Below are positions 781-54,365 of a stretch of 64,000 bases of DNA, piece after piece. The notes under the pieces are model-generated. The model saw only the letters and a program-made list of their open reading frames with translations, had not been told where the DNA came from and searched no databases. The stretch lies in IMG/VR virus record IMGVR_UViG_3300032307_000369, positions 181,551 to 245,550 of that record; one strand, 5' to 3'. The position numbers were made by a program, and so were the translations under genes. The first letter of the stretch is position 1, and every line of letters begins with the position of its first letter.

Positions 781-792
781 TTTTTAACTCCG

Positions 793-818
793 ATAAATAA
801 TATACTGCATTATTTATA
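793..818. promoter_or_regulatory. Pair of face-to-face late promoters (TAAATA on +, TATAAATA on -)
   Basis: TAAATA at 794-799 (+) and TATTTATA at 811-818 (TATAAATA on -). Together they form the inverted repeat ATAAATAAT-N7-ATTATTTAT between two divergent genes. Confidence 0.6.
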
Positions 819-842
819 TGCGTATATTTCTGGGAAAATTAA

Positions 843-3236: not shown

Positions 3237-3245
3237 GGATTAAGA

Positions 3246-19787: not shown

Positions 19788-19795
19788 TATAAATA
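19788..19795 (+). promoter_or_regulatory. T4-type late promoter TATAAATA
   Basis: Exact T4 late consensus, 38 nt upstream of the giant fibre ATG. Confidence 0.7.
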
Positions 19796-29986: not shown

Positions 29987-31039
29987 ATGGCGATATTAAA
30001 AAATACTTCTTTTAGAGATTCCAACAGCGTACTCACAATACCTTCTGGAACTACTGCACAACGTCCATTGCGCCCGCCTAACGGCGCAATGAGATTTAAC
30101 ACGTCATTTGGTGTCACAGAGATTTATATGAATAATGGTTGGCACGATGCATCTAACGGTTCTAGACTGATTGATGCTTGGCCAACCAGTATTGATAGCG
30201 GTGGCATGTTTGTTGAACTTTGGGGTGGTGGCGGTGGGGGCGGAAGACCAGGCGGCTGGAGTCAAGGATCAGAAGGAGGAGCTGGCGGATATTCTTGGGG
30301 TTGGATAAACACTGAAGTAGTTCCAACTGGATCAACGCTTATATTGCAAGTAGCTGGCGGTGGCGCAGTTGGAGGTACTTCTAGTGCTTTCCCAGGCGGC
30401 GGAACAGTTATTGGCGGCGGCGATAATAGATATGGATCGGCTGGCGGTGGATATTCTGGTTTATTTCTAACCACGGTCACACAGGCTAATGCAATTTTAA
30501 TCGCAGGCGGTGGTGGTGGTGGCGGCAGTAGTCGAGCAAATACAGGTAATATTGGTGGCGCAGGCGGTGGCATTGAAGGCAGAGATGGGCACAGTCCATA
30601 TGATTCAAAAGAAGAATGGCGTGGTCGTGGCGGCACACAGACATTTGCTGGTGAAGCAAGTGGTCGTGATAGATACGGTATAACTTGTAACAATTCAAGT
30701 GATCAACAAGGCGCACTGCAAGGCGGTCGATGTACAGTTGGCAGTGGCTACGGTGGTGGCGGAGGCGGCGGTTACTGGGGTGGATCAGGAGGCGGCTATT
30801 CAGAATCAAACACCATGGCAGGTGGTGGCGGCGGTAGCGGATTTGTACACCCATCAAGAATTGTAGGGGGCGGCACGCTAGCAGGCGCTTGGAGAACTCC
30901 ACCAAATCCACCTAGCGGTAGTTTAGGATACGGCGGAACAAACAGTAGTGCTGGAAATAACGGATTTGCAAGGATAACTAGAAATGGCGTAGTAACCACA
31001 TACAGTTTTACTGGCAGTAATGTGACGATCACCTTATAA
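29987..31039 (+). CDS. Glycine-rich (polyglycine-II-type) adhesin-like virion protein
   Basis: PSGTTAQRP..GAMRFNT connector followed by many GGGGG runs (ELWGGGGGGG, GGGGGYWGG). Confidence 0.7.
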   Translation: MAILKNTSFRDSNSVLTIPSGTTAQRPLRPPNGAMRFNTSFGVTEIYMNNGWHDASNGSRLIDAWPTSIDSGGMFVELWGGGGGGGRPGGWSQGSEGGAGGYSWGWINTEVVPTGSTLILQVAGGGAVGGTSSAFPGGGTVIGGGDNRYGSAGGGYSGLFLTTVTQANAILIAGGGGGGGSSRANTGNIGGAGGGIEGRDGHSPYDSKEEWRGRGGTQTFAGEASGRDRYGITCNNSSDQQGALQGGRCTVGSGYGGGGGGGYWGGSGGGYSESNTMAGGGGGSGFVHPSRIVGGGTLAGAWRTPPNPPSGSLGYGGTNSSAGNNGFARITRNGVVTTYSFTGSNVTITL

Positions 31040-31052
31040 TGGAATAATAAGA

Positions 31053-32969
31053 ATGGCAATTTTAAGAAATACAACTTTTAGTGAAACTGGTGGATTTTTA
31101 TCCTTACCCGCTGGTACAACAGCCCAGCGTCCTGGACTTTATACTTCAGCTACAATTGTACAGTTAACTACAGTGGGCACTAGTACATGGACGGTTCCAG
31201 CAGGGGTTACTACTATTGAAGTATTATTAGTTGCTGGAGGTGGTGGTGGCGGTTTCCAAGTTGGCGGTGGTGGTGGTGGTGGCGGAGTAGTATACCGTCC
31301 ATTTTATCCAGTAACTCCTGGCGCAAATATCACGTATACTATTGGTGGTGGCGGAACTGGCGCAGCCAATAGTGGTGTCGCTGGCACAAACGGACAAGAT
31401 ACTACGTTTGGTTCTGGCGGCGATCAAGTGGTAGCTAAAGGCGGTGGCGCCGGAGCAAATCATAGTACTAGCGTTGGAGGTTATGACGGGATTGGTCAAT
31501 CAGGCGGGTCAGGTGGTGGCGGCGCTGGAGATAGTTCTAGTAGAAGTCAACGTGGCGGATATCCAGTAGACGGTCAAGGTTACCCAGGCGGAAGAGGTCG
31601 AGGTGGTAATCATCCAGGATTTAGTGGGAATGCTTGGGCAGGCGGTGGTGGTGGTGGCGCTGGTGGCCCAGGCCAAGATTCAAACGTAAATGGTCAAGGT
31701 GGTAATGGTGGTCCAGGCATTACAACAAACATAACATGGAACGGCACTGGCGCACAAACACTAACAAATTACGGCGGTGGCGGTGGTGGATGTAGCGGCC
31801 CAGGTTCATCTGGCCACCGTGCTGGTGGTGGTATTGGTGGTGGCGGTTCTGGTGCTGGAGATGGCGACAGTGGAGCTCCTAAAAACGGTGTTGCTAACAC
31901 AGGTGGCGGTGGTGGTGGCGTTCGCGACACTTCAGGTGCTGCCGGAAATGGCGGAAGTGGTATTATCATAATTCGTTATTTTGCTGATAGACAGCCCTTA
32001 ATGTCTGGATCTATTAGATTAAACACTGACACTGGTAGAGTTGAACAGTTTCAAAGCAATGGTGTTTGGGGTGAAGTTGCTATTCCATTTTTAACAAGAC
32101 AAATTATTACCACTGCATACATGTTAGGTGGTTACAAAGATGCGGCAGCTTGGAATAACGTTAATAGAACTAGTGTGGCTACTGATGTAACTATTAACAT
32201 TGGTGATAACTCTATTGAAAGAAGTTTTAATTACCAAGGTGGTGCGTGTAGCACTAACCTAGCCTACGTTTTTGGTGCAGGTAACGGCCATGCTATTAAC
32301 AGTAACTATGTTATAGCGTTCAACATGCGAACAGAACAAGCGTATAACCCAGGCAGCGGCATGAGCAGAACTATGGCAGGTAGTAGATGGACGTTTGGTA
32401 CAATGTTCAAAGAAACTTATTTGGCATGGAGTGCTGGCGGTGGCGATGCAAGATTAGAAGAATATAACATGACCACTCAAACTCTAGTGGGAACAATTAC
32501 AAGTGTTAGACAAGGTGGAAATACATGGGCCATGAGCCATGAAAATTTTGGATACATTTATTGGGCAAATGATCAAGATAGATTTGATTTTGCCACCCGA
32601 ACATTGCAGTCTGCGGGTATTCGAAATGGCATATCCAACCACGATCAACAAAAATCTATACAAAGTAAATACATGTGGGCATGGGCAGGAAATGAAGGAA
32701 GTTATAACGGCGGAAATAGTCTAAGAAGAACTAACATGCAAACAGACACTACTATGGGAACATATGGTAAACCAGTTGGTAATAGTGGTGAAGAAAATCT
32801 TACTATGGGACAAGACTGGCAATACATGATAGGCATGTATAACGGCGCACAAAATAATATTAGTTGGAAATGGTATTACTACACTGAAACTGGTGCACAA
32901 AACTCAAGCACACTTGAACCAAAAGGTAAGGGCGGAGCGAGTTCTGGTACATGTAGCTGGAGAGATTAA
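31053..32969 (+). CDS. Gly-rich plus beta-propeller-like adhesin
   Basis: WTVPAGVTTIEVLLVAGGGGGG ... GGSGIIIIRY Gly-rich domain, then AYMLGG/AYVFGA-type kelch-like blades; ends CSWRD. Confidence 0.7.
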   Translation: MAILRNTTFSETGGFLSLPAGTTAQRPGLYTSATIVQLTTVGTSTWTVPAGVTTIEVLLVAGGGGGGFQVGGGGGGGGVVYRPFYPVTPGANITYTIGGGGTGAANSGVAGTNGQDTTFGSGGDQVVAKGGGAGANHSTSVGGYDGIGQSGGSGGGGAGDSSSRSQRGGYPVDGQGYPGGRGRGGNHPGFSGNAWAGGGGGGAGGPGQDSNVNGQGGNGGPGITTNITWNGTGAQTLTNYGGGGGGCSGPGSSGHRAGGGIGGGGSGAGDGDSGAPKNGVANTGGGGGGVRDTSGAAGNGGSGIIIIRYFADRQPLMSGSIRLNTDTGRVEQFQSNGVWGEVAIPFLTRQIITTAYMLGGYKDAAAWNNVNRTSVATDVTINIGDNSIERSFNYQGGACSTNLAYVFGAGNGHAINSNYVIAFNMRTEQAYNPGSGMSRTMAGSRWTFGTMFKETYLAWSAGGGDARLEEYNMTTQTLVGTITSVRQGGNTWAMSHENFGYIYWANDQDRFDFATRTLQSAGIRNGISNHDQQKSIQSKYMWAWAGNEGSYNGGNSLRRTNMQTDTTMGTYGKPVGNSGEENLTMGQDWQYMIGMYNGAQNNISWKWYYYTETGAQNSSTLEPKGKGGASSGTCSWRD

Positions 32970-34021
32970 TGGCAAATTTAAGAAATACACGAATTAACGA
33001 CACTGGTTTTTTAACTTTACCAGGCCCAGTTTTTAATACTAGCGGGCAAGCACAAATACGATATAATCCAGGAAGAAATGCAATTGAAACCTTTAGTCCA
33101 ACGGAAGCAGGACAATATGGACAAGGCACTTGGCGCATTGCATCAATTCCATTCTTTACCAGACAAATTATAACCACTGGATACTTGCACGGCGGGTATC
33201 AGTCAAGCGTGGTTTTTAACACAACCAACAGGACTGTATTTGCAACAGATACAACTATTGATTTAACTGGCGCAACACAAAAGCAAGAAGCGGCGCACAA
33301 TTATCAAAGTGAAGCTCATAGCGGCACATTTAGTTTTACATGGGGAGCTTCAGGAAGCCACTGCGTGGCTGCTGCCAACGTTATTTGTTTTAACATGAGA
33401 ACAGAAGTTAGAAAAACTTCTGGATACACAAGAAGTTGGCCATTTGCGCACATTAATAACGGCACTGTACAACAAGATTTGGTAAAAGCATGGGTCACTA
33501 GTACATATGGTTCTAGTGCAACGTACGAGTTCGACCTTGTTACTGAAACGCTGGGTGCTAATTTAGGTAATAGTACTGGCGGACAAAACTGGGGGACTAG
33601 TCATGACAATTTGGGAATTTTTTATGGCAACGGAGAACGTAATTTTTACTTTGCCACTAGAACAATGACTACTCGATCAGGAACTGCGGTAGCAGGAGAC
33701 GGTCTACAACATACAATTCAATTCAAACAAGGCATGCACATGTCTGGTAGAGAAGGAAACCCAAGTACAAACTGGCGAGAAACTGACATGATTACTAATG
33801 CTTCAAGAGATGTTGTTGGAGCAAAACCAAACGTAAGTGGCGAAGAAAACATGACCGTAGGTCAAGATTGGGGCTACTGCTTAGGGTTTTACAACGGAGC
33901 ACACGTCAATACCACATATAAATTTATCTATCAAACAAGAACTGGACAAACCATGGGCAGTACAACTGAGCCTAAAGGTAATGGTGGAAACAGTTCCGCA
34001 ACTATGTCCTGGCGAGATTAA
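32969..34021 (+). CDS. Beta-propeller-like virion protein (paralog of the C-terminal half of the previous gene)
   Basis: Shares IPF.TRQIITT.Y..GGY, FNMRTE, SGEEN.T.GQDW.Y and EPKG.GG.SS; ends MSWRD. Confidence 0.7.
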   Translation: MANLRNTRINDTGFLTLPGPVFNTSGQAQIRYNPGRNAIETFSPTEAGQYGQGTWRIASIPFFTRQIITTGYLHGGYQSSVVFNTTNRTVFATDTTIDLTGATQKQEAAHNYQSEAHSGTFSFTWGASGSHCVAAANVICFNMRTEVRKTSGYTRSWPFAHINNGTVQQDLVKAWVTSTYGSSATYEFDLVTETLGANLGNSTGGQNWGTSHDNLGIFYGNGERNFYFATRTMTTRSGTAVAGDGLQHTIQFKQGMHMSGREGNPSTNWRETDMITNASRDVVGAKPNVSGEENMTVGQDWGYCLGFYNGAHVNTTYKFIYQTRTGQTMGSTTEPKGNGGNSSATMSWRD

Positions 34022-34060
34022 TAAGGTTAAATATAAGACTTAATATATTTAGAGGGACTT

Positions 34061-35454: not shown

Positions 35455-35504
35455 TTTACATTTTACTAGAAAGGTGCTATAATAAGTATATAGTACCTTT
35501 TTTT
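35455..35504 (+). promoter_or_regulatory. Sigma70-type promoter overlapping a terminator-like hairpin
   Basis: TTTACA (35455-35460), 17-nt spacer, TATAAT (35478-35483), with an extended TG. Arms 35470-35481 and 35489-35500 pair (one G-U) and are followed by TTTT. Confidence 0.6.
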
Positions 35505-37196
35505 ATGGCTCTTATGAAGAAAAAAATTTTTAGCGTTCCACTTAATCCAAAACTTTCTCCAGATCAATATCTAGAATTTTATAACTTTCTAGCGGAGTAT
35601 AAAGATTATATTCGAGATGTTTATTTCACTTCTCGAATTAAACCATTTATGCAAGATGCAATGGGAGACGTGTTTGTCATACAAGAAGATTATCAATATG
35701 CTATTGATGCGGCTTTGTATATTCAAAACACTTTGGGTATTCCTGTTAGTGCAACATTTAACAATATTAGTGTCCCACCAACACAGATTAACCTAGATAC
35801 CTTTATATCTAATTTCAAACCATTGTATGATAAGGGCATAAGAAATGCCACTATCCCACATACGCACTGGATGGCTACTGGTCAGATCAAGGCAGCATTT
35901 CCTGAACTGTATGTAAAAAATACAATTTTAAGAGAAGTGCATACCGCACAAGAAGTTGTTAATCTAGCCAAAGCAGGATTTGATTATGTTAATTTAGATA
36001 GAGATCTGATGAGAGATCGTGATGCTTTATTAAAGATTAAAAAGGCTAAAGAATATATTAAAGAAACAATGGGGAAAGATATTGCGATCAGTCTGCTATC
36101 TAATGAAGGTTGCTTAGGTGGCTGTTCCATGATGGTGGAACATTTTGAGTTCAATAACAATAGAATAGGCGCAAGCCCGCAATACTTTAATGATCCAATC
36201 AGTAGAGTTAGTTGTCCTAAATGGGACGTATTGGATCCAGCAGTGCATCTTAAAACAGCCAACTTTCCTCCTTGGAGAGCTGACTGGGTAGAATTTGTAG
36301 AGGAGTTAGGCATTGACAGTTTTAAAATGCACGGCAGAGAAGCAGTGTCAAGACTCTACGAGACAATGGAAATTATTAGAAGATTTGCTCGAGAAGAAGA
36401 AATTTTAATTGACGGGTTTGAAAAGTATTTAGAAGAAACAAATTTAGTAGATAAGCCAATTAACATATGGCGACAAAAAATTAAGAATTGCAAATTTGAA
36501 TGTTGGGAATGCCAATATTGTGATAAAATTTACGATAAAAAGGCAGCTGACATTAAGTATTCAGAACTTGTACAACACGTAGTTGAGTGTATAGCGGATA
36601 GTGGAATTCCAACAGTTAGTACAAATGTTCCAGGACTTACAAGTATTCGAGTTCAATCATTGTTAAATGCAATTGCATCAGGCGTTGATACGTATTTAGA
36701 AGTTGGATCAGGTGTTGGTGCAACAATGTCTGCGGTGTTAAAAAATAATCCTATACATGCTATTGCAGTTGATAACTGGCAGCAGAATATACAACCATTA
36801 ACTGATAACATAGCACAGCTACCTGAAAATACTGTAGAAAACTTTACTGAAAATATTAAAAAATATAGTGGCGCATCAAGAATTGATGTATATAACGGGG
36901 ATCTTTTTAGTATAGATACTAGTACATTTGAAAAACCAATCAAAATGTTTTTCTATGATGGCCCGCATGATTTAGCCAGCACTAAACGTGCAGTTCAACA
37001 TTATGCCAGTTGTTTAGATAACGAGGCAATTTTAATTTTTGATGATGCAAATTGGGAAGGCGTTGTTGAAGGCGCTAGACAAGGGATCAACGCTGTTGGA
37101 GGTCACGTGACTTATGAAAAATTAATTTTAAATAGTGTTGAAAATCCAAGAGAGTGGTGGAACGGCTTGTATATATTAGTAATGAGGAAAAGATGA
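35505..37196 (+). CDS. Peptidase U32-like Fe-S protein fused to a class I SAM methyltransferase (Methyltransf_24-like)
   Basis: U32-like NEGCLGGC...H, SCPKW and FKMHGRE; Cys cluster CKFECWECQYC; C-terminal YLEVGSGVG, FFYDGPH and IFDDANW. Confidence 0.7.
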   Translation: MALMKKKIFSVPLNPKLSPDQYLEFYNFLAEYKDYIRDVYFTSRIKPFMQDAMGDVFVIQEDYQYAIDAALYIQNTLGIPVSATFNNISVPPTQINLDTFISNFKPLYDKGIRNATIPHTHWMATGQIKAAFPELYVKNTILREVHTAQEVVNLAKAGFDYVNLDRDLMRDRDALLKIKKAKEYIKETMGKDIAISLLSNEGCLGGCSMMVEHFEFNNNRIGASPQYFNDPISRVSCPKWDVLDPAVHLKTANFPPWRADWVEFVEELGIDSFKMHGREAVSRLYETMEIIRRFAREEEILIDGFEKYLEETNLVDKPINIWRQKIKNCKFECWECQYCDKIYDKKAADIKYSELVQHVVECIADSGIPTVSTNVPGLTSIRVQSLLNAIASGVDTYLEVGSGVGATMSAVLKNNPIHAIAVDNWQQNIQPLTDNIAQLPENTVENFTENIKKYSGASRIDVYNGDLFSIDTSTFEKPIKMFFYDGPHDLASTKRAVQHYASCLDNEAILIFDDANWEGVVEGARQGINAVGGHVTYEKLILNSVENPREWWNGLYILVMRKR

Positions 37197-38704
37197 TTAG
37201 TAAGGTAAAAAATATAGTAATTTTTGGCGGAGGTACAAGCGGTTGGCTTACTGCGGCCTACATGGTAAACAATTTAAAAATACCAACTAAGATTACATTA
37301 ATAGAAGATACTTCTCTTGGACCAATTGGTGTTGGAGAAGGTACTCAACCATTGACTGCACAATTTTTACATCAGTGCGGTATTCCACCAAAAATGTGGA
37401 TGAAACCAAGCCAAGCAAGTTTTAAATTTGGTGTTGAATTGGTTGGTTGGAATGACGAGCCATATTTTGTAGATAACGACACTATCAATAATGCAGTTAT
37501 ATCAGAAGACTTTTTTACTAGTGATTACTTTTTAAATAAGGACCCTAAAGAATTTAGAGATTGGCATCCTGCTTATCAATTGGCAAAAGAAAACATTTGT
37601 CCTAAAATTGAAGGAAGTATGGATGTAAATTTTGGTTCAGGAGAGGCTGGATATGGCGCAGTACATTTTAATGCTTACGAAATTATAAAAACAATAAAAG
37701 ATATCATACTTGATAAAATTACATATATTGATACTAAAATTGAAAATATTGAAAAAGACATATATGGAATTACTAAGCTAGTTGATGACAAGAATAACTC
37801 TTACACTGCTGATTTGTTTATAGATTGCAGTGGGTTTAAATCACTGTTACTTGAAAAAACATTAGGATCTCCATTCACTTCATACACAGATTATTTGCCG
37901 TGTGACAAGGCAGTAGTACTTCCAACACAATATACTGATCCTGAAAAAGAATGTTTTCCTTACACTCGTGCAACAACCATGACGTCAGGTTGGAGATTTA
38001 CGATTCCAATTTTTACAAGGGTTGGTAATGGTTACATTTATAGCAGTAAATTTATCAGTAAAGAAGATGCAGAAAAAGAGTTAAGAGAAAGCGTTGGCGA
38101 ATTTGATGCAACTGCAAGACACTTAGATATGAAATGTGGAACACATAAAGAAATTGCTGTTAAAAATGTCTGTGCAGTGGGATTAAGTGCAGGGTTTGTG
38201 GAACCATTGGAAGCAACTGGCATCACTTTTACTACTGCTGTGGTAAGATCAATTACTGACTTATTAAACATGAGTGGAAATGTTTGGAATCAACAAGTAA
38301 AAGACTACATTAACAGAGGATTTCATGAAATGACTACTGAAATTGTAGCATTTGTTTGGGCCCACTACCACTTTGCTACAAGACGAGACACAGATTTTTG
38401 GAAAAATATTGGTGAACAACGCTTAGAAAATTTGCCAGAAGATGTACAGTATGTATTAAGCAATTTTTACCCAATGCCAAGTAAGTATCTTTATTTTAGT
38501 CCTGGCTCAATGTTTAACGCTGTGCAATGGTTTAGTGTTATTCATGCTGGTAAGGGATATGCTAACGTAAAAAATACACTGTCAGAAAAACAAGAACTTT
38601 ACGGAAAATATTTTAAAGAAGTACATGAATCAAGAGTTGGCATGGCAAAGAATACTTTTCCAAATCAATATCAGTATCTAAAGGATTGGTATGCAAAAGT
38701 GTAA
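37193..38704 (+). CDS. Flavin-dependent (tryptophan halogenase family) halogenase
   Basis: GGGTSG FAD motif, GVGEGT, ASFKFG (catalytic Lys position), FIDCSGF, WRFTIP and GFVEPLEATG; start at 37193 via ATGA overlap. Confidence 0.9.
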   Translation: MISKVKNIVIFGGGTSGWLTAAYMVNNLKIPTKITLIEDTSLGPIGVGEGTQPLTAQFLHQCGIPPKMWMKPSQASFKFGVELVGWNDEPYFVDNDTINNAVISEDFFTSDYFLNKDPKEFRDWHPAYQLAKENICPKIEGSMDVNFGSGEAGYGAVHFNAYEIIKTIKDIILDKITYIDTKIENIEKDIYGITKLVDDKNNSYTADLFIDCSGFKSLLLEKTLGSPFTSYTDYLPCDKAVVLPTQYTDPEKECFPYTRATTMTSGWRFTIPIFTRVGNGYIYSSKFISKEDAEKELRESVGEFDATARHLDMKCGTHKEIAVKNVCAVGLSAGFVEPLEATGITFTTAVVRSITDLLNMSGNVWNQQVKDYINRGFHEMTTEIVAFVWAHYHFATRRDTDFWKNIGEQRLENLPEDVQYVLSNFYPMPSKYLYFSPGSMFNAVQWFSVIHAGKGYANVKNTLSEKQELYGKYFKEVHESRVGMAKNTFPNQYQYLKDWYAKV

Positions 38705-39269
38705 ACTTTTTAGAGCTGATCTGTTTTTAGAATCAAATGTTGGTACAGATGAGCAATACAATGATTTACTAAAACAAATTAGATTCGCTCAGAGTATGAA
38801 TAGTAATCCTGCTCCTCACAGTAATGAGAACTGTTGGAGAACTGAAACACAGTATCAAAATATTGGATGGTTACTGCAAGGTTTAAGAAAGTTGTTAGAT
38901 GAATTTATTCTTGAATATAAACATGAATTAGACTATAAGAATTTAGATTACAATAAAATTTCATATTTTTATTGGACAAACATCAATGCACCACATAGTA
39001 AAAATGCTAGACACGCACATGTCAAAAGTCATTTTTCAGCGGTGTACTACTTGCAATCAGAAAATACTGGAGCCCTTAGACTAATTAATCCAGCAAACGG
39101 ACTGTCTGAATGTAACCCAGGCGCTCCGTATATTTCAGACGTTGTTTATCCACCAAAGGATCGAGATTTAGTAATGTGGCCTGCCTGGGTTCCACATGAA
39201 GTTGATCCAAATTATTCAAATAAAGAAAGAATAAACTTAACATTTGATATTACAATAGGTCCAAAATGA
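38691..39269 (+). CDS. Putative 2OG-Fe(II) oxygenase (TIGR02466-like)
   Basis: W.NIN....N..HAH...FSAVYY ... PAWVPHEV.PN....RINLTF. Confidence 0.8.
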   Translation: MQKCKLFRADLFLESNVGTDEQYNDLLKQIRFAQSMNSNPAPHSNENCWRTETQYQNIGWLLQGLRKLLDEFILEYKHELDYKNLDYNKISYFYWTNINAPHSKNARHAHVKSHFSAVYYLQSENTGALRLINPANGLSECNPGAPYISDVVYPPKDRDLVMWPAWVPHEVDPNYSNKERINLTFDITIGPK

Positions 39270-40003
39270 AAGATATAATTTTCTTCTCAACGGTTGAGGG
39301 AGTTTCAGAAGTTTGTCCAATTGTTCCCGCATTAAAATCATTACCAGCCTGGACGAATGTTGCTAGAGAAAAATACATTAAGGAAAAAAATGACAGTAAC
39401 GAAAGAGTTAGTCATCTTTATCAATGCCCAGGAATTTTTGATTTGTATAACTATGGATATATAGTTACAGCTTGGCACGATTTTGTAATTAAAACTGATC
39501 AAAATAAACAAGGGTTTGCTTGGACTATTCCACATTCAGAATTGGCAGATTTGATGAACGGTATAGATATTATTGGTACACATCAACAAAGAATAAGTGA
39601 ACTTATTCCATCTCGACCAACTTCGATCAAACAGATTATTAAACTTAATACACCTTGGCATGTGATTGCACCAAAAGGAATCAAATTTATTGTACTACCT
39701 ATCGCATATCCTGATTCATTTGAATTTGATAGTCATATTGGTATTTTGGATCCTTCTGTCAGTTCTGAAATTAATGTCCAATTAAACTGGAATGTTAAAG
39801 ATGGCGAAACATTAATCAAAGCAGGAACGCCTTTAGCACACCTAATACCAATTAGCGAAGATAAATTTAATCTAATTTGTAGAGATGCAACTGACAATGA
39901 CAAGCGTTGGTTGCGAAAAAGAAATTTCTTTAACAATTTCACTTTTAAACTCAAAAGAAATGTGATTAAAGAATTTTATTATAAACATTTTTATGGAAAA
40001 TAA
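39266..40003 (+). CDS. Hypothetical protein, possible dUTPase-like beta fold
   Basis: CPGIFD...GYI, KLNTPW, GILD and IKAGTPLAHLIP; canonical dUTPase catalytic motifs are not evident. Confidence 0.45.
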   Translation: MKDIIFFSTVEGVSEVCPIVPALKSLPAWTNVAREKYIKEKNDSNERVSHLYQCPGIFDLYNYGYIVTAWHDFVIKTDQNKQGFAWTIPHSELADLMNGIDIIGTHQQRISELIPSRPTSIKQIIKLNTPWHVIAPKGIKFIVLPIAYPDSFEFDSHIGILDPSVSSEINVQLNWNVKDGETLIKAGTPLAHLIPISEDKFNLICRDATDNDKRWLRKRNFFNNFTFKLKRNVIKEFYYKHFYGK

Positions 40004-40005
40004 TT

Positions 40006-40404
40006 ATGCTACACGAAATCAATGACGGAGAATTCGCAACATATATTGTTGTTGAGAGGAAAGTTAAAGACGAATATACTGCAAGAAAAGTACAAAAAGA
40101 TAGACGTAAATTGCAAATATGGTTAGATGCATTATTAAGTGATCGCCATGTTATTATCTTCTATAAAGACGGTATTGAAGAAAAAATGTTTGTGGGTAGT
40201 AAAAAAGAAATGTTTGGTGAACTACCAACAACTCCTATGAATATTGACATTGTTAATAACAAAGTAAAATTACAAAGCTATTACTGCACTTGTTTTGAAG
40301 TTCCCAATAGAACTCCTGTTGCTGTACATGTTGATTCTGTGACTAAATTTATTGTTAAGCAAGAAGGATTATCAGAACTCAGTTCAAGGATTAGATTTAT
40401 ATGA
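40006..40404 (+). CDS. Hypothetical protein (weak resemblance to phage WYL/Sm-like proteins)
   Basis: IIFYKDG..KM ... HVDSV pattern only; the ORF is coupled to its neighbours. Confidence 0.4.
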   Translation: MLHEINDGEFATYIVVERKVKDEYTARKVQKDRRKLQIWLDALLSDRHVIIFYKDGIEEKMFVGSKKEMFGELPTTPMNIDIVNNKVKLQSYYCTCFEVPNRTPVAVHVDSVTKFIVKQEGLSELSSRIRFI

Positions 40405-40985
40405 TTGAAAACGATTTTATTGGGGTATACGACCAAGCGTTGACCAAGGAAGAGTGTGATGAAATCATACGCTACTTTGAAGAGATGAAAAAATTAAACT
40501 TAGTATTTGACCGCCAAAGTTTAAAAGACGGACATGCCCACGAAAAACAAGATGAAACTTGTTTTCCTATGGAACTAGATGAGTTCTATGTTGACAAAAC
40601 TCATCCAACTCTTAAATTATTTTTTGATAAATTTTGGCCATGCTACGAAGAATATGTAAAAAAATACAGTGTGTTAGCAACATCGGTCAAACACGGATCA
40701 CTTGGTATTAGAGTTCAAAAAACCCCAATTGGTGGCGGGTACCATCCTTGGCATTACGAAAATGATGGAAGATTGTCATCATCACGTGTCATAGCATTTA
40801 TGCTATACCTTAACACTGTTACTATTGGTGGTGAGACAGAATTTTTATATCAGCACAAACGAGTCAGTCCAACGCAAGGTAGAGTAGTAATTTGGCCCGC
40901 AGGATTTACGCATACTCATAGAGGAAACCCTCCATTAAGCGGTGAAAAATATATTGTCACTGGTTGGTTAGAGTGGATGGCTTAA
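40401..40985 (+). CDS. 2OG-Fe(II) oxygenase, prolyl-4-hydroxylase-like
   Basis: GGYHPWHYE, R....MLYLN.V..GGETEF, WPAGFTHTHRG.PP and KYIVTGW. Confidence 0.9.
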   Translation: MIENDFIGVYDQALTKEECDEIIRYFEEMKKLNLVFDRQSLKDGHAHEKQDETCFPMELDEFYVDKTHPTLKLFFDKFWPCYEEYVKKYSVLATSVKHGSLGIRVQKTPIGGGYHPWHYENDGRLSSSRVIAFMLYLNTVTIGGETEFLYQHKRVSPTQGRVVIWPAGFTHTHRGNPPLSGEKYIVTGWLEWMA

Positions 40986-42856
40986 TTGACAATCATTATC
41001 ATGCCACGCATTGTAGTATGGTATTGACAATTATAGTATAATTCATCAGGAGCATCCATAGGCACAACAAATGTGATAGTGCCGTTATCTGTTCCGTTAT
41101 TACCTACACCATAATATGCATCAACAGATCCTAATGTTAGCGTAGTTTTGATCCAAAATGGATGTCCCACAGCATTAATGTTGAACACATATCGCTGACC
41201 TCTAGTTAAGGTAAACATTGGATTAATACCTGATACACCTCCACTAAAGACATAATTTCCTGATCCGTTGTTTGTAACATTAAATGCAACTGGCGCAGGA
41301 TTTGTGTAGCCCACTTCTGTGGTTACTTCATACACAACGCTTCTATTAAATGGCTGACGTAAAAATCTATTAGGAGCAGATTGCAAACTTTGTACGTCTG
41401 TGTATCCTCCGCCAGTATCACTTAATCTACCAGTTCTGGCAATGGTCTGTACCCAAGTTCTAACTTTTGCAGGAGTCCAATTTTTTCTACTTTGTAACAT
41501 ACATGCAACAACGCCTGCAACTTGTGGACCTGCCATACTAGTGCCGCTAGATTTGACAGATTTAAAGTTACTATCTGTTGGGTAATCAACTGACCCTGAA
41601 TCAAATAAGGAACCAACAGCTGCCGCACTGATAATATTTTCTCCAGGAGCAAATACGTCTACTCTTGGGCCACAGCAACTGAAAAAACTTTTACCTTCTG
41701 GATTAGCTGATTTTACAGAACCAACACTTATTACGCCTGAAGTTGAACTAGGAGTGGAACCTCTATGATAATATATTGTTCCGTTAACTGTACTGGTATA
41801 GCTGTTATTATAATCAGTTCCTGTAGGTATATCTATTTTGTGAGCATCGTTTCCAGCAGAGCCTACTAGTATGACCCCTGCATCTATACAATCTGCAATA
41901 TCAGCGTCTACAGAAGCAACTCTAACAGGGTGAATATAAACAAAGTTTGGGCTTACTCCAGTTCTATTGTATAATGTTTGAATCATACCATAAGCACTGA
42001 CCATACTGGATCCAGTCCATGGAGTACCACGATATGATCCGCCATTTATATTAGTATACGAATTAAAATAACCCCAACTCATATTGACCACTGTAGGTCT
42101 TCTTGCACCATCAAGAGCATTTACTGGCTTACTTAGATGCCAAGCTCGTATCATGTTGAAGCTAGCACTAACACCAAATGCATCAGTATCAAATATTTTG
42201 ATAGCATATATATTGGCTTCTTTAGCCCAACCATATAATCTTCCTGCAACAGTTCCAGCACAATGTGTTCCATGACCTTCTTGGTCAGTATAATGACTTG
42301 AACCTTGTGTATAAGTTCCAGTTAATCCGCTAATTCCAGGCCAATTTACCTGTTGAAATCTAGAGGCTGTGCCTTCTAAATTAAGCCATTCTGGATGAGT
42401 AGGATCAATACCACTGTCTTGGATTACTACATCAACACCATTTCCACTTAAAGAATATGCATGTTGAAAATTCAATGTTGTTGTAGTGTAAGGATTTGTT
42501 GCGGCGACACAAGCAGGAAACGCCCAATTATAATGTGAGGAGTCCACAGTTATTGATTTGTCGTAAACCCTAGAGTCTTCTAATATATGAGGTTTTAAAA
42601 AGATATTATTTTCTTGCTTTGTTCCATATCTAACATCAATAATTCTTGGATCGCCTTTTAATGTTTCTGCTTCTAACCTAGTTAATACAAAATCAACATT
42701 ACGCAAGCTGTCTATTTTTTCATTATATAATTCTACAGGTCTATTGGGCATGAATTCGTTATGATTTTTGCCACTGACCATGTCCTCAATAAATGCGTCA
42801 ACGTCTACACCTTTATGTAGAGTGACAACTGCTTTGTTTGTATCTTCTGTACTCAT
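40982..42856 (-). CDS. Subtilisin-like (S8) serine protease with C-terminal cupredoxin-like domain
   Basis: Catalytic triad motifs QDSG, HGTHCAGT and SGTSMAGP; oxyanion SAGN; N-terminal propeptide-like region; C-terminal GHPF...YYNCQYHTTMRG. Confidence 0.9.
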   Translation of the reverse strand: MSTEDTNKAVVTLHKGVDVDAFIEDMVSGKNHNEFMPNRPVELYNEKIDSLRNVDFVLTRLEAETLKGDPRIIDVRYGTKQENNIFLKPHILEDSRVYDKSITVDSSHYNWAFPACVAATNPYTTTTLNFQHAYSLSGNGVDVVIQDSGIDPTHPEWLNLEGTASRFQQVNWPGISGLTGTYTQGSSHYTDQEGHGTHCAGTVAGRLYGWAKEANIYAIKIFDTDAFGVSASFNMIRAWHLSKPVNALDGARRPTVVNMSWGYFNSYTNINGGSYRGTPWTGSSMVSAYGMIQTLYNRTGVSPNFVYIHPVRVASVDADIADCIDAGVILVGSAGNDAHKIDIPTGTDYNNSYTSTVNGTIYYHRGSTPSSTSGVISVGSVKSANPEGKSFFSCCGPRVDVFAPGENIISAAAVGSLFDSGSVDYPTDSNFKSVKSSGTSMAGPQVAGVVACMLQSRKNWTPAKVRTWVQTIARTGRLSDTGGGYTDVQSLQSAPNRFLRQPFNRSVVYEVTTEVGYTNPAPVAFNVTNNGSGNYVFSGGVSGINPMFTLTRGQRYVFNINAVGHPFWIKTTLTLGSVDAYYGVGNNGTDNGTITFVVPMDAPDELYYNCQYHTTMRGMIMIVN

Positions 42857-42858
42857 TT

Positions 42859-43956
42859 TTAAATTCCTGTTGTATCCGCGTTGTAGAAAAAGTATCCAGT
42901 ACCATCACTTGTTGTGGCAATTCCTGGACCACTAAATGAAAATGTTATGAAGGCAGCTCCTACACCATTTCCGTATAATACTCTAACTGGATAGTATGTA
43001 CCAGCTGTCAATTGTATATTCCCACTTGTGACTGTACCAGTATTAAATGTGGCAAACACATTGGCATTGCCAGTAGTATAACCACTAACGGCATTGTTAC
43101 CAATCCAAAAATAACTGCCATCATCAGATGCTAGTCTAAAATTATAAATTCCAGTTGTTGGTGCTAGGAAGTAACCTACCCATTGGTAGCTGATGTTATC
43201 ACCAATTGACGGATAATTAACTGCGTTAGTTGCACCTTCTGCCGTAGGGGCGGTCATGTAATTCACGTTTTCGTTATGATAACCCAGTTGATATGATTGA
43301 TATAATCCTGCAATTGGATATATGGTTCCTCGTATTTGCATCCAATCAATTCTAAAATCGTCAACGGCTGTGGCTCCAAAATCAAATCTAATACCAGTAA
43401 TGGTATTATTGGTCCAGTCAGTGCCTCCAGCTGTTAAATTTCTATTATCAATGATCATGTATTGATAGTCAACCCCGTTCCATGTTGGTTGAGTGTAAAC
43501 GTTTCTAAATGAATTTGACTCACCATGACCACCAGTTGTGTAGTAGAATGTACCGTCCCATCCAGTGCCTCCAGTTCTAAGTAATGAAACTTCAACATAT
43601 GGATATCTACTGCCATCAAAACTCAAACCTGTTCTTCTAAGCTGGGGATCAACTGTTGTGGCATCTAAAGTTGAATATGTTGAACCAGATGCAGTCAAAG
43701 TAGCATTAGTGGTAGTAAAGGATTGATTAGTTGCGCCAAAATCAAAAACAATACCAGGACCAGCAGTTGTAACTCCTACTGGCACAATTGCATTGCTTTT
43801 TCCATAGCCATCAGCAGCCAATCGTATGGCTCCTGCACCAACTCCATATAGAGTTCTAACAGATGCTTGTCCTAAAGATATTTGTGTAGTGCCAGTAAGT
43901 CCTAGCTCTACGTTAATATCACTAAAGTCTATTTGTCCGTTTGCTGGTAATGGCAT
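42859..43956 (-). CDS. Fibre-tip adhesin with PA14/GLEYA-like domain
   Basis: N-terminal MPLP..G.I...DIN.ELG...YGKS cap; C-terminal WVGYFLAPTTG.YNF.LASDDGSY.WI...L.AG.YYPVR. Confidence 0.8.
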   Translation of the reverse strand: MPLPANGQIDFSDINVELGLTGTTQISLGQASVRTLYGVGAGAIRLAADGYGKSNAIVPVGVTTAGPGIVFDFGATNQSFTTTNATLTASGSTYSTLDATTVDPQLRRTGLSFDGSRYPYVEVSLLRTGGTGWDGTFYYTTGGHGESNSFRNVYTQPTWNGVDYQYMIIDNRNLTAGGTDWTNNTITGIRFDFGATAVDDFRIDWMQIRGTIYPIAGLYQSYQLGYHNENVNYMTAPTAEGATNAVNYPSIGDNISYQWVGYFLAPTTGIYNFRLASDDGSYFWIGNNAVSGYTTGNANVFATFNTGTVTSGNIQLTAGTYYPVRVLYGNGVGAAFITFSFSGPGIATTSDGTGYFFYNADTTGI

Positions 43957-43957
43957 G

Positions 43958-47311: not shown

Positions 47312-47312
47312 C

Positions 47313-47582
47313 TTATTCTCCTAAATCCGCAACATTTACCACATGCACTCTATTTTCTAAACAGCAGTTATATCCGCCGTTAATTGAATGTTGTGACTCG
47401 TCCCATAACATTTGAAAGAAATCTTCTCTTTCAAATATTCTAGTCAATTGATCCATTTTAATTGCTGTATTGGTTACAGTATTAAACAAGGTTAAATCGT
47501 ATAAGGAATTAATAGTGCCATCAGCAGACTGTCGTGTGCCGTTCTCAGTTATTGTATATTTCCATGTTCCTAATATTTGCAT
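47313..47582 (-). CDS. Hypothetical small protein in the fibre operon
   Basis: 89 aa; fills the gap exactly, with 1-nt spacing to both neighbours. Confidence 0.6.
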   Translation of the reverse strand: MQILGTWKYTITENGTRQSADGTINSLYDLTLFNTVTNTAIKMDQLTRIFEREDFFQMLWDESQHSINGGYNCCLENRVHVVNVADLGE

Positions 47583-47583
47583 T

Positions 47584-54336: not shown

Positions 54337-54365
54337 TTGACATCCCAGTAGAAACAATATAAAAT
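54337..54365 (+). promoter_or_regulatory. Sigma70-type promoter for the dNMP kinase gene
   Basis: TTGACA (54337-54342), 17-nt spacer, TAAAAT (54360-54365). Confidence 0.7.

What the first reader, a model, noticed from the sequence alone, without database searches (positions are those of the whole stretch)
35505..40985. Six-gene halogenase/hydroxylase/methyltransferase cassette wedged between two fibre operons
Seen: tightly coupled U32-methyltransferase, flavin-dependent halogenase, TIGR02466-like oxygenase, dUTPase-like-fold protein, small unknown and P4H-like oxygenase, flanked on both sides by adhesin and fibre genes. No precursor peptide, scaffold synthase or flavin reductase is visible. 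Known: these families halogenate aromatics and hydroxylate or methylate substrates; a phage halogenase (VirX1) has been characterised, but I know of no established natural substrate for it. Inference: a virion post-translational tailoring system acting on Trp/Tyr/Pro-rich adhesins (receptor tuning, protease resistance) rather than auxiliary metabolism.
Basis: partly seen in the sequence, partly recalled or inferred. Interest (0 to 1): 0.75.

Follow-up and report, generated by a model that had tools for sequence, protein, structure and literature searches.

The report
Phage halogenase-oxygenase tailoring operon beside fibres
An uncultured freshwater T4-like phage carries six tightly packed genes for intact halogenating, hydroxylating and methylating enzymes next to its tail-fibre genes; this is a compact new version of a cyanophage gene cluster known since 2010, and its natural substrate is still unknown.

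Summary
Six overlapping + strand genes at 35505-40985 encode:
- a TIM-barrel (U32-like fold)/O-methyltransferase fusion;
- a flavin-dependent halogenase with all catalytic residues;
- a TIGR02466 dioxygenase;
- a DUF6065 protein with a dUTPase-like fold;
- a small unknown protein;
- a P4H-like dioxygenase.

Fibre and adhesin genes lie on both sides.

The cassette is not a new kind. Genes 2-6 are a reduced form of the Syn9/Syn10 (VirX1) halogenase-dioxygenase-"dUTPase-fold" cluster described by Iyer et al. 2010. Gene 1 is a separately conserved cyanomyovirus gene (T4-GC354) that is fused into the operon only in this freshwater lineage.

Evidence for a link to fibres:
- In all eight cultured phage species whose cluster I inspected, the cluster follows the tail-fibre block directly.
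- In five of seven it sits behind a late-type promoter motif, and in the other two it abuts the fibre genes.
- The gene 1 homologue in P-HM2 is experimentally late.

Evidence against:
- Here a conserved terminator hairpin and a sigma-70-type promoter separate the cassette from the fibre operon.
- The fibres are neither Pro-rich nor collagen-like.
- Related enzymes also occur beside bacterial TonB receptors.

The substrate remains unproven. My estimates are phage late proteins or peptides about 0.35, small molecules about 0.30, and nucleic acid about 0.10.

The parts
29987..34021 (+). Three fibre-module proteins upstream: 29987-31039, 31053-32969 and 32969-34021. The first two are 23-27% Gly.
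   Evidence: The first has an ALK/LTK glycine-rich domain, PF12810, E 2e-13. PHROG matches phrog_1417 and phrog_863 'tail fiber assembly'. Composition. Homologues lie upstream of the cassette in 68 of 80 related loci.
34027..34034 (+). Late-promoter-like motif TTAAATAT, 34 nt upstream of the 291-aa gene.
   Evidence: The same NTAAATA motif lies 12-50 nt upstream of ten operon-leading structural genes in the window. NATAAATA is the cyanomyovirus late promoter according to PMC2984593.
34061..35447 (+). Two late-module genes of unknown function, 291 aa (34061-34936) and 180 aa (34905-35447), that precede the cassette.
   Evidence: phrog_1409 for the first; no family for the second. They are present in 74 and 54 of 80 related loci, always in this order before gene 1. 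The 291-aa protein is homologous to T4-GC353 of P-HM2 and Syn19.
35455..35483 (+). Sigma-70-type promoter: TTTACA, 17 nt, TG-extended TATAAT. It ends 22 nt before the start codon of gene 1.
   Evidence: It is the best site in 9.1 kb. Equivalent sites with a 17-nt spacer are conserved upstream of gene 1 in related loci: 27% of 64 distinct loci score at least 11 of 13, against 0.5% of control windows. Genome-wide, 23 of 45 such sites lie in the 4.8% of DNA that is non-coding, mostly in the non-structural part of the genome.
35468..35502 (+). Terminator-like hairpin (14-bp stem, then a U-run) that overlaps the -10 box, between the 180-aa gene and gene 1.
   Evidence: -14.9 kcal/mol, z -3.8 against shuffles. 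Comparable hairpin-plus-T-run sequences are visible in many related loci.
35505..37196 (+). Gene 1 (563 aa): an N-terminal Cys-rich TIM barrel with a U32-like fold, fused to a class I SAM-dependent, cation-dependent-O-methyltransferase-like domain.
   Evidence: Seven Cys are invariant (C203, C207, C237, C329, C333, C336, C339). It is homologous to T4-GC354 in 126 phage records.
37193..38704 (+). Gene 2 (503 aa): flavin-dependent halogenase.
   Evidence: PF04820, E 3e-90. PDB matches: PyrH 1e-64 and VirX1 2e-54. GGGTSGW, K78, E337 and W267-x-[W/F]269-x-I-P are conserved in 60 orthologues.
38691..39269 (+). Gene 3 (192 aa): TIGR02466 / 2OG-FeII_Oxy_5 dioxygenase.
   Evidence: H108-x-H110, H169 and R180 are invariant in 57 orthologues.
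39266..40003 (+). Gene 4 (245 aa): DUF6065 / Syn9-gp43 family, dUTPase-like fold, invariant Cys54.
   Evidence: It lies immediately downstream of the halogenase in the seven DUF6065-carrying cyanophage species where both coordinates were listed.
40006..40404 (+). Gene 5 (132 aa): unknown, lineage-restricted, with a basic N-terminal motif.
   Evidence: No family match. Present in 47 of 80 related loci at 25-45% identity. No detectable homology to Syn9 gp44.
40401..40985 (+). Gene 6 (194 aa): P4H-like 2OG-Fe(II) dioxygenase.
   Evidence: PF13640, E 6e-12. Nearest solved homologue is B. anthracis P4H, E 8e-6. H118-x-E120, H171/H173 and K183 are invariant.
40982..50343 (-). Convergent fibre/adhesin operon: a subtilase-fibre-connector fusion (40982-42856), a PA14/GLEYA lectin protein (42859-43956), a long-tail-fibre-like 1117-aa protein (43958-47311), an 89-aa ORF (47313-47582) and a 919-aa fibre-connector-like protein (47584-50343).
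   Evidence: A late-like motif GTAAATAG lies 32 nt upstream of the 919-aa gene. The stop codon of the subtilase-fusion gene overlaps the end of gene 6 tail to tail.

Best explanation
The locus is a tailoring-enzyme operon built from two parts.

- Genes 2-6 are a compact member of the cyanomyovirus cluster of halogenase, DUF6065 and tandem 2OG-dioxygenases. This is the cluster that contains VirX1 in Syn10.
- Gene 1 is a separately conserved late-module gene. It encodes an Fe-S-type hydroxylase-like TIM barrel fused to an O-methyltransferase. It has been joined to the cluster in this freshwater lineage.

No version of the cluster encodes a scaffold-making enzyme. The enzymes must therefore act on something already present in the infected cell.

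My committed reading, at about 0.35, is that the substrates are side chains of phage-encoded late proteins or peptides of the fibre module. The proposed steps are all inferred:
- The P4H-like and TIGR02466 dioxygenases hydroxylate residues.
- The halogenase uses FADH2 from a host flavin reductase and halide to halogenate an exposed Trp or Tyr on a flexible tail or loop.
- DUF6065 is the halogenase's dedicated partner, as a substrate-presenting or thiol-dependent accessory protein.
- Gene 1 adds hydroxyl-then-O-methyl groups.

Shown here: gene order, intact catalytic residues, folds, synteny, and promoter and terminator motifs. Inferred: every substrate and every reaction.
For: Enzymes are intact and under purifying selection.

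The cluster type is attached to the 3' end of the tail-fibre block in all eight cultured phage species whose cluster I inspected, plus this lineage. The downstream neighbours differ: neck genes, helicase/methylase genes, or a convergent fibre operon. Three solitary halogenases lie elsewhere.

In marine phages the first cluster gene has a late-type NTAAATA motif at -29 to -34 (5 of 7) or abuts the fibre-assembly gene (2 of 7).

The gene 1 homologue PHM2_101 is experimentally 'Late', like its fibre-module neighbours.

P-RSM6 has a 2OG oxygenase inside its fibre block.

Gene 6 is nearest to a collagen-peptide prolyl hydroxylase.

DUF6065 is fused to JmjC/Cupin_8 domains in bacteria. Iyer et al. 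read bacterial JmjC enzymes as peptide modifiers.

VirX1 has an unusually large, open active site and no assigned natural substrate or gene cluster (PMC8407142).

A small late protein (Syn9 gp40 family) sits at most about 100 nt upstream of the halogenase in all nine species where both coordinates are known. In 6 of 7 it carries a conserved P-x-W motif in a variable C-terminal tail, which makes it a candidate substrate. The 180-aa protein family here has a Trp within its last 12 residues in roughly half of its members, by eye.

No synthase or flavin reductase was found.
Against: No modified protein has been observed.

In this lineage a terminator hairpin and a conserved sigma-70-type promoter uncouple the cassette from the late fibre operon.

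The neighbouring fibres are not Pro-rich and have no collagen repeats.

In the window phage itself, the C-terminal Trp of the 180-aa protein family is replaced by Phe. No gp40-like gene exists in this genome.

To my knowledge, flavin-dependent halogenases are known to act only on small molecules, carrier-bound substrates or short peptides, never on folded proteins. VirX1 halogenates small aromatics in vitro.

DUF6065 keeps dUTPase motif III- and IV-like residues, which suggests a small-ligand pocket.

Related enzyme sets lie beside TonB receptors in bacteria.

All fibre-linked clusters are in one virus family with collinear genomes. The linkage could therefore stem from a single ancestral insertion into a hyperplastic site.
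Confidence: 0.35

Rival explanations
1. Small-molecule tailoring (an auxiliary metabolic or secondary-metabolite function). The enzymes hydroxylate, halogenate and O-methylate a free host metabolite such as tryptophan, an indole, a phenol or a quinone-type compound. The product would be a bioactive or protective compound. This is the reading proposed for Syn9 by Iyer et al. 2010, and is reported as a suggestion from the Syn9 genome paper in PMC2984593.
For: This is the literature's reading for the homologous cluster (PMC2938197; PMC2984593).

VirX1 halogenates diverse small aromatics.

The halogenase is about equally close to free-Trp halogenases such as PyrH and PrnA.

DUF6065 keeps the dUTPase ligand-pocket motifs.

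Halogenase, 2OG and JmjC-DUF6065 sets sit beside TonB-dependent receptors in bacteria.

The cassette has its own host-type promoter here.

Solitary phage halogenases sit among metabolic genes, for example next to psbA and hli in S-MbCM6.

From my own knowledge, U32 hydroxylases followed by O-methylation are the logic of anaerobic ubiquinone synthesis (UbiU/V then UbiG).
Against: No scaffold, transporter or resistance gene occurs in any phage version.

Up to ten different dioxygenases without a synthase is odd for one metabolite.

The cluster is consistently attached to the fibre block, with late-type promoters or late expression in marine relatives.

P4H-like and JmjC enzymes mostly act on proteins.
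Confidence: 0.3
2. Nucleic-acid or nucleotide modification. Gene 1 hydroxylates and O-methylates a pyrimidine C5 in tRNA, rRNA or DNA, as TrhP plus TrmR do. The dUTPase-fold protein binds a pyrimidine nucleotide, and the halogenase and dioxygenases act on bases.
For: The gene 1 N-domain matches TrhP2 and TrhP by fold.

Its methyltransferase domain's best real PDB sequence matches are TrmR/YrrM and the uncharacterised S. aureus protein MW1564, which I take to be related. Both are weak (E about 0.03; two viral protease chains scored better).

The Atlas shows bacterial U32+Methyltransf_3 fusions named tRNA 5-hydroxyuridine methyltransferase. This is a lead only, at score 0.81.

DUF6065 aligns with dUTPase motifs III and IV.

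The genome encodes 19 tRNAs, including Thr-UGU and Pro-UGG.

The promoter is host-type.
Against: There is no sequence-level U32 match.

DUF6065 shows no counterpart of the dUTPase C-terminal phosphate-binding motif V, and I found no match to motifs I and II.

The gene 1 homologue in P-HM2 is a late gene inside the fibre operon. That is too late for DNA-precursor modification.

To my knowledge no flavin-dependent halogenase is known to act on nucleobases.
Confidence: 0.1
3. The six genes are not one pathway. Gene 1 (with the two genes upstream of it) belongs to the conserved late fibre module and has its own function. Genes 2-6 are a mobile cluster that inserted next to it. The tight coupling is lineage-specific packing. 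This rival is about anatomy and is compatible with any of the substrate readings above.
For: Gene 1 homologues occur in 126 phage records. In P-HM2 and Syn19 no halogenase lies beside them.

The eleven most divergent related loci have gene 1 without a halogenase.

The five marine clusters tested by tblastn lack gene 1.

Gene order within the cassette varies, gene 6 can sit upstream of gene 1, and extra dioxygenase genes come and go.
Against: Gene 1 and the halogenase share an ATGA overlap and one promoter here. They stay adjacent in 69 of 80 related loci across 51-72% protein identity.
Confidence: 0.4

Closest known systems
Syn9 gp40-gp54 / Syn10 cluster: two Trp-type halogenases (one is VirX1), the gp43 'dUTPase-fold' protein and about ten tandem dioxygenases (Iyer et al. 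2010, PMC2938197)
   Same: Both have a halogenase followed by a DUF6065/gp43 homologue (35% identity), plus TIGR02466-type and P4H-type dioxygenases. Both have the same orientation and the same position directly after the tail-fibre block. Neither has a scaffold gene.
   Different: Here there is one halogenase and two dioxygenases. There is no JmjC member and no gp40- or gp44-like gene. A U32-like/O-methyltransferase gene is fused in front. The promoter is sigma-70-type with a terminator, not a late motif. The halogenase is only about 28-33% identical to those of cultured phages. The distribution is freshwater.
VirX1 (PDB 6QGM) and bacterial tryptophan halogenases (PyrH, PrnA, RebH)
   Same: Same Pfam family. 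FAD motif, catalytic Lys and Glu are conserved.
   Different: The second Trp of WxWxIP is Phe in the window enzyme and is W/F polymorphic in the lineage. Substrate and halide preference are untested.
U32-family hydroxylases (TrhP, RlhA, UbiU/UbiV) followed by an O-methyltransferase (TrmR/YrrM or UbiG)
   Same: TIM-barrel fold match to MJ1657, TrhP2 and TrhP. Conserved Cys clusters. A cation-dependent-O-methyltransferase-like C-domain with weak TrmR matches. The 'hydroxylate then O-methylate' logic comes from my own knowledge of these pathways.
   Different: No Pfam U32 match in 31 members or in the genome. The Cys spacing includes a CX3CX2CX2C block. The protein is a single fused polypeptide. 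In P-HM2 it is a late gene within the fibre module.
Bacterial loci with a TonB-dependent receptor, Trp-halogenase-like genes, SapC and JmjC (Iyer et al. 2010)
   Same: The same enzyme families co-occur without a synthase. DUF6065 is fused to Cupin_8/JmjC in Pseudomonadota, and one DUF6065 relative lies next to a Plug-domain receptor.
   Different: Cellular context, an outer-membrane receptor in place of fibres, and no U32-like fusion.
Collagen-type prolyl 4-hydroxylases (Bacillus anthracis P4H)
   Same: Gene 6 shares the PF13640 domain and the HxE...H...K residues.
   Different: Only E 8e-6 over 95 residues. No collagen-like G-X-Y repeat exists anywhere in the 245-kb record.

Membership tests
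Flavin-dependent (tryptophan-type) halogenase | Match to PF04820 over its full length | tested here: met
   E 3.4e-90, profile positions 1-446 of 458. PDB homologues PyrH 1e-64 and VirX1 2e-54.
Flavin-dependent (tryptophan-type) halogenase | GxGxxG FAD motif, catalytic Lys and conserved Glu | tested here: met
   GGGTSGW, K78 and E337 are invariant in 60 orthologues. The assignment of K78 and E337 to the PrnA K79/E346 positions rests on motif resemblance recalled from memory.
Flavin-dependent (tryptophan-type) halogenase | WxWxIP motif | tested here: inconclusive
   The window enzyme has W-R-F-T-I-P. The second position is W in 33 and F in 27 of 60 orthologues.
Flavin-dependent (tryptophan-type) halogenase | Halogenating activity, and a partner flavin reductase | not testable with these tools
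   No PF01613 reductase in the 245-kb record. Supply from the host is assumed.
Cyanomyovirus halogenase-dioxygenase cluster (Syn9 type) | Halogenase plus several distantly related 2OG dioxygenases in tandem on one strand | tested here: met
   Genes 2, 3 and 6. Relatives carry one more dioxygenase.
Cyanomyovirus halogenase-dioxygenase cluster (Syn9 type) | gp43-type dUTPase-fold protein with a conserved Cys next to the halogenase | tested here: met
   Gene 4 is 35% identical to Syn9 gp43. Fold. Cys54 is invariant.
Cyanomyovirus halogenase-dioxygenase cluster (Syn9 type) | JmjC/MINA-type dioxygenase, and a gp40-like leading gene | tested here: not met
   No Cupin_8/JmjC match in the cassette. 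No gp40-like sequence in the genome or in related loci.
Peptidase U32 / TrhP-RlhA-UbiUV hydroxylases (gene 1 N-domain) | U32 TIM-barrel fold | tested here: met
   Foldseek: MJ1657 E 1e-9 with TM 0.66 normalised by the hit, TrhP2 2e-7, TrhP 1e-6. Atlas structural neighbours are U32 clusters.
Peptidase U32 / TrhP-RlhA-UbiUV hydroxylases (gene 1 N-domain) | Sequence match to PF01136 | tested here: not met
   None of 31 members matches at E up to 1. No match in the genome at E up to 10.
Peptidase U32 / TrhP-RlhA-UbiUV hydroxylases (gene 1 N-domain) | Four Cys ligating a 4Fe-4S cluster at the family's positions | tested here: inconclusive
   Seven Cys are invariant, but they lie in low-confidence loops. 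I did not align them to the U32 Cys positions.
Cation-dependent O-methyltransferase / TrmR-like (gene 1 C-domain) | Class I SAM-methyltransferase domain of the Methyltransf_24/3 type | tested here: met
   PF13578 matches in all 31 members, best E 2.8e-11. Structural matches are COMT-like O-methyltransferases. TrmR/YrrM only at E 0.027.
dUTPase / dCTP deaminase (gene 4) | Five dUTPase sequence motifs, including the C-terminal P-loop-like motif V | tested here: not met
   Only motif III-like (G-x-L-D) and motif IV-like (IKAGTPxAQLI) segments align, at E 0.04-0.4. The C-terminus is helical. There is no Pfam dUTPase match. Gene 4 therefore shares the fold but is not a dUTPase.
TIGR02466 / 2OG-FeII_Oxy_5 (gene 3) | Score above the curated cut-off, and metal/2OG-binding residues | tested here: met
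   66.8 bits against 62.5. H-x-H...H...R is invariant.
Prolyl-4-hydroxylase-like 2OG oxygenase (gene 6) | PF13640 match and HxD/E...H...K/R residues | tested here: met
   46.8 bits against a cut-off of 27. H118-x-E120, H171/H173 and K183 are invariant.
RiPP or other biosynthetic gene cluster | Precursor peptide or scaffold synthase in the cluster | tested here: not met
   No synthase family was found in the cassette or flanks. Gene 5 and the 180-aa protein show no precursor-like features in this phage.

The most novel reading that the evidence does not exclude
Proteins of the tail-fibre module are enzymatically halogenated on Trp or Tyr and hydroxylated or O-methylated by this operon. Candidates are the small late protein encoded just upstream of the cluster, or the glycine-rich and lectin-type fibre proteins. 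This would be the first enzymatic protein halogenation known in a virus. It might mirror bacterial loci where the same enzyme families sit beside TonB-dependent receptors, so that both sides of the phage-receptor interface would be chemically edited.
Probability: 0.2. Interest if true: 0.9.

Novelty: new variant of a known kind. Interest (0 to 1): 0.55.

Why it matters
Tryptophan-halogenase genes were already noted in cyanophage genomes in 2005 (PMC1079782), and VirX1 is a sought-after iodinating biocatalyst. Even so, no natural substrate or role is known.

This locus shows three things:
- The cluster exists in a minimal five-gene form.
- In one deep freshwater lineage it is wired to a U32-like hydroxylase/O-methyltransferase.
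- Across at least eight cultured phages it travels with the 3' end of the tail-fibre module.

This narrows the question to two testable alternatives, modification of late or virion proteins versus a halogenated metabolite. It also names concrete candidates for mass spectrometry in phages that are already in culture: the gp40-like P-x-W tail and the fibre-module proteins.

If proteins are the target, it would add a new chemistry to phage host recognition. If metabolites are, it would show that phages make organohalogens in lakes and oceans.

Tried and rejected
**Checks that came back negative**
- Collagen link for the P4H-like enzyme: no run of five or more G-X-Y triplets in any frame of the 245-kb record, and Pro is not enriched in the fibres.
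- Cyanophage identity: no psbA (PF00124) in the record, so the host is unknown. The sequence occurs in freshwater, lake and subsurface metagenomes.
- Expression data: the one run search (asked with kind 'any', which is not a dedicated RNA search) listed no RNA run holding the region.
- Sequence-level U32 membership: negative.
- Flavin reductase: none.
- Homology of the 180-aa protein to Syn9 gp40, and of gene 5 to gp44: hhalign probabilities are 0.4% or less.
- gp40-like gene in this genome: none.

**Searches that led nowhere**
- DUF6065 as a general fibre-associated protein. Contexts are mixed: one relative follows a tail-collar fibre gene, others lie among small ORFs, next to a TonB receptor, or after a ferredoxin.
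- The search for homologous proteins with the DUF6065 alignment listed only close viral relatives.
- Megablast of the cassette against cultured phages: no match.
- The PDB Foldseek search with the gene 1 model was dominated by the methyltransferase domain.

**Papers not held**
- The Syn9 transcriptome paper (Doron 2016) and the VirX1 paper are not in the library. The timing of the Syn9 cluster therefore rests on promoter motifs only.

**Idea considered and set aside**
- I considered a radical-SAM reading of the CX3CX2C block in gene 1. The best fold matches are U32 proteins. A radical-SAM cluster appears in the Atlas list at TM 0.48 against 0.49 for the best-annotated U32 cluster. The reading is not excluded.

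Full report
**Setting**

The window is the last 64 kb of a 245,550-bp IMG/VR virus record that CheckV estimates to be 70% complete. It is the structural module of a T4-like myovirus:
- Portal, major head protein, baseplate-wedge-like giants, tail sheath and tail tube are all present.
- The record carries 19 tRNA genes and no psbA.
- The sequence recurs in freshwater, lake and subsurface metagenomes.
- The nearest cultured relatives of its genes are marine cyanomyoviruses (Kyanoviridae), at 28-46% protein identity.

The host is therefore unknown, and 'cyanophage' is an analogy rather than a finding.

Six + strand ORFs occupy 35505-40985.
- Four junctions overlap and the fifth is a 2-nt spacer, once the halogenase is started at the ATG at 37193.
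- Related IMG/VR loci fetched with gene 1 keep this order: 291-aa gene, 180-aa gene, gene 1, halogenase, gene 3, gene 4, gene 5. Homologues covering at least 40% of the query were found in 69, 65, 58, 47 and 22 of 80 loci for genes 2 to 6.
- Catalytic residues are invariant in the orthologues:
  - Halogenase: FAD motif, K78 and E337.
  - Gene 3: H-x-H...H...R.
  - Gene 6: H-x-E...H...K.

These are real, selected genes.

**What each gene is**

*Gene 1.* It has a Methyltransf_24 domain at residues 398-514.
- An AF2 model built on 31 homologues has mean pLDDT 77 and shows an eight-stranded beta/alpha barrel at residues 8-345.
- The best Swiss-Prot structural matches to the barrel are U32-family proteins: MJ1657 (E 1e-9), B. 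subtilis TrhP2 and E. coli TrhP.
- The C-domain resembles cation-dependent O-methyltransferases.
- The best real PDB sequence matches to that C-domain are TrmR/YrrM and an uncharacterised S. aureus protein. Both are weak, at E about 0.03.
- No member of the family matches Pfam Peptidase_U32.
- Seven Cys are invariant, including a CX3CX2CX2C block. They lie in low-confidence loops, as expected for metal sites.

*Gene 2.* It is a full-length flavin-dependent halogenase. The second Trp of WxWxIP is Phe here and is W/F polymorphic in the lineage.

*Gene 3.* It is a TIGR02466 dioxygenase.

*Gene 4.* The model is confident (pLDDT 92).
- All of its top-50 PDB matches are dUTPases or dCTP deaminases.
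- A family profile hits dUTPases weakly, at motifs III and IV.
- The remaining dUTPase motifs were not found, so it is not a dUTPase.
- It belongs to DUF6065, the family of Syn9 gp43. The family is large, with 3068 clusters at 50% identity.

*Gene 5.* It has no relatives outside the lineage.

*Gene 6.* It is P4H-like. Its nearest solved homologue is the B. anthracis collagen-peptide prolyl hydroxylase.

**This is a known kind**

Iyer et al. 2010 (PMC2938197) described 'remarkable' cyanophage neighbourhoods in Syn9. [quoted passage not shown] They proposed the synthesis of halogenated, hydroxylated secondary metabolites.

Syn10, the source of VirX1, has the same cluster. VirX1 has a large open active site, and no natural substrate or gene cluster is assigned to it (PMC8407142).

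Genes 2, 3, 4 and 6 of the window have homologues in those clusters. In the seven DUF6065-carrying cyanophage species where both coordinates were listed, the DUF6065 gene lies immediately downstream of a halogenase.

**What is new here**

Gene 1 is the homologue of T4-GC354.
- It is a 'hypothetical protein' present in 126 phage records.
- In P-HM2 and Syn19 it ends the conserved block T4-GC351-354 after the tail fibres, with no halogenase beside it.
- Only in this freshwater lineage is it joined to the halogenase cluster, by an ATGA overlap or with one extra dioxygenase gene in between.
- The cluster here is minimal: one halogenase and two dioxygenases. It lacks the JmjC member and the gp40- and gp44-like genes.

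**Linkage to fibres**

All eight cultured phage species whose cluster I inspected show the same order: tail fibre, fibre-assembly-like glycine-rich proteins, gp40-like gene, halogenase(s), then dioxygenases.
- The eight are Syn9, Syn10, S-RIM44, P-TIM40, S-CREM1, S-WAM1, Sf-FR1 and P-RSM6.
- What follows the cluster differs: neck genes in S-RIM44 and Sf-FR1, and helicase and methylase genes in Syn9 and P-TIM40.
- P-RSM6 even has a dioxygenase inside its fibre block.
- Solitary halogenases lie elsewhere: between the terminase subunits in HTVC008M, after SbcCD in S-B64, and beside psbA in S-MbCM6.

However, all positive cases belong to one family with collinear genomes, so the number of independent events is unknown.

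**Timing**

In the window, an NTAAATA motif lies 12-50 nt upstream of ten operon-leading structural genes, including the 291-aa gene. The late promoter of cyanomyoviruses is NATAAATA (PMC2984593). The motif is absent upstream of gene 1.

Instead, the 57-nt gap before gene 1 holds two elements:
- The best sigma-70-type site in 9 kb: TTTACA, 17 nt, TG-extended TATAAT.
- A 14-bp hairpin followed by a U-run, at -14.9 kcal/mol and z -3.8. The hairpin overlaps the -10 box.

Comparative and genome-wide support for the promoter:
- The -35 and -10 boxes are kept in related loci while the spacer changes. Among 64 distinct loci, 27% score at least 11 of 13, against 0.5% of control windows.
- Genome-wide, 23 of 45 such sites fall in the 4.8% of DNA that is non-coding, mostly in the non-structural part of the genome.

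I infer that this lineage terminates the late fibre transcript and restarts the cassette from a host-type promoter.

Elsewhere the picture is late:
- Five of seven marine clusters have an NTAAATA motif 29-34 nt before the gp40-like gene. The other two abut the fibre genes.
- PHM2_101, the gene 1 homologue, is classed 'Late' in light and in dark, like its neighbours PHM2_098 to PHM2_100 (Thompson et al. 2016, supplement).

Timing therefore does not decide the function.

**Candidate substrates**

The window's fibres are Gly/Thr-rich. Trp is raised to 2.3-2.6% in three of them, Pro is not enriched, and no collagen repeat exists.

In marine clusters the gp40 family is a cluster component:
- It was found in 20 cyanophage records.
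- It lies at most about 100 nt upstream of a halogenase in all nine species where both coordinates are known.
- In 6 of 7 species it carries a conserved P-x-W motif in an otherwise variable, Pro- and acid-rich C-terminal tail.

The positional counterpart here is the 180-aa protein. By eye, a Trp lies within the last 12 residues in about half of its distinct homologues, but in the window phage that Trp is Phe. These are leads only.

**Weighing the readings**

*For a protein or peptide substrate:*
- The fibre-module attachment.
- Late co-expression in relatives.
- P4H- and JmjC-type hydroxylases.
- No scaffold gene in any version.
- VirX1's open active site.
- The candidate Trp-bearing tails.

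*For a small molecule:*
- Everything known about the substrates of flavin-dependent halogenases.
- The ligand-pocket motifs of DUF6065.
- Bacterial loci where the same families sit by TonB receptors.
- The host-type promoter here.

*For nucleic acid:*
- Only the fold resemblances of genes 1 and 4.

I put these at about 0.35, 0.30 and 0.10, with the rest unassigned. Separately, I put 0.4 on gene 1 not sharing a substrate with genes 2-6.

**Verdict**

The locus is a new variant of a known but functionally unsolved cluster. It is of moderate interest because it turns a question that has been open since halogenase genes were first noted in cyanophage genomes into specific mass-spectrometry experiments on phages already in culture.

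Noticed in passing
window 40982-42856 (- strand): A 624-aa protein combines a subtilase domain (Peptidase_S8, E 3e-32, residues 138-474) with a C-terminal part like a baseplate-wedge tail-fibre connector (phrog_677). It may be a virion-borne protease.
   Followed up: no
window 42859-43956 (- strand): A 365-aa protein in the fibre operon carries a GLEYA/PA14 lectin-type domain (E 2e-23), as found in fungal adhesins. It has 7.1% Tyr.
   Followed up: no
window 29987-32969 (+ strand): Two fibre-module proteins are 23-27% Gly. The first matches the ALK/LTK glycine-rich domain PF12810 (E 2e-13). This explains the local GC peak of 0.51. Proteins ending in similar Gly-rich sequence lie just upstream of the halogenase cluster in marine phages.
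   Followed up: partly
L084:9998-10492 (Syn9 gp40) and homologues in L086, L087, L088, L103, L104, L105: A small protein family found in 20 cyanophage records lies at most about 100 nt upstream of the halogenase in all nine species where both coordinates are known. It is behind a late-type motif in 5 of 7 and has a conserved P-x-W motif in a variable C-terminal tail in 6 of 7. It is a candidate halogenase substrate or partner. It is absent from this window's genome.
   Followed up: partly
window 34905-35447 and homologues in L004-L073: By eye, about half of the distinct homologues of the 180-aa protein end in a P-x-F-x-[VI]-x-W-type tail, with a Trp in the last 12 residues. In the window phage and its closest relative the Trp is Phe.
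   Followed up: partly
L012:11662-12258 and equivalents in about 15 related loci: Many relatives carry an extra dioxygenase of about 200 aa (2OG-FeII_Oxy_5, H-E-H motif) between gene 1 and the halogenase. Gene 6 sits upstream of gene 1 in some loci. The dioxygenase content is therefore fluid.
   Followed up: yes
Syn9, S-RIM44, P-TIM40, S-WAM1 and Sf-FR1 records (L084, L086, L087, L103, L104): Several genes in these dioxygenase arrays are labelled 'DNA endonuclease V', 'ferrochelatase' or 'minor coat protein'. Gene 6 of the window, a clear 2OG oxygenase, also matches PHROGs carrying the endonuclease and ferrochelatase names. The labels are therefore probably propagated annotation errors.
   Followed up: partly
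window 19788-19795 and 19834-29979: A 3381-aa ORF is preceded at -45 by one of only two exact TATAAATA sites in the window.
   Followed up: no
window 54337-54365, upstream of ORF 54389-55051: This is the only other strong sigma-70-type site in intergenic DNA of the structural window (TTGACA, 17 nt, TAAAAT). It precedes a 220-aa gene of unknown function between the fibre operon and the tail sheath gene.
   Followed up: no
G000 positions 376-3414 (outside the window): An array of 16 tRNA genes lies at the start of the record, with three more at about 50.8 kb and 53.8-54.0 kb. No psbA is found in 245 kb, so the host is unresolved.
   Followed up: no
L089:6806-8795: In an unrelated T4-like phage contig, a DUF6065 relative directly follows a tail-collar (PF07484) fibre gene with no halogenase nearby. 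Other relatives lie next to a TonB Plug receptor or a ferredoxin.
   Followed up: partly
one search hit list (Ralstonia phage records): Gene 1 homologues also occur in three Ralstonia solanacearum phage records, so the U32-like/methyltransferase fusion is not confined to cyanophage-like viruses.
   Followed up: no
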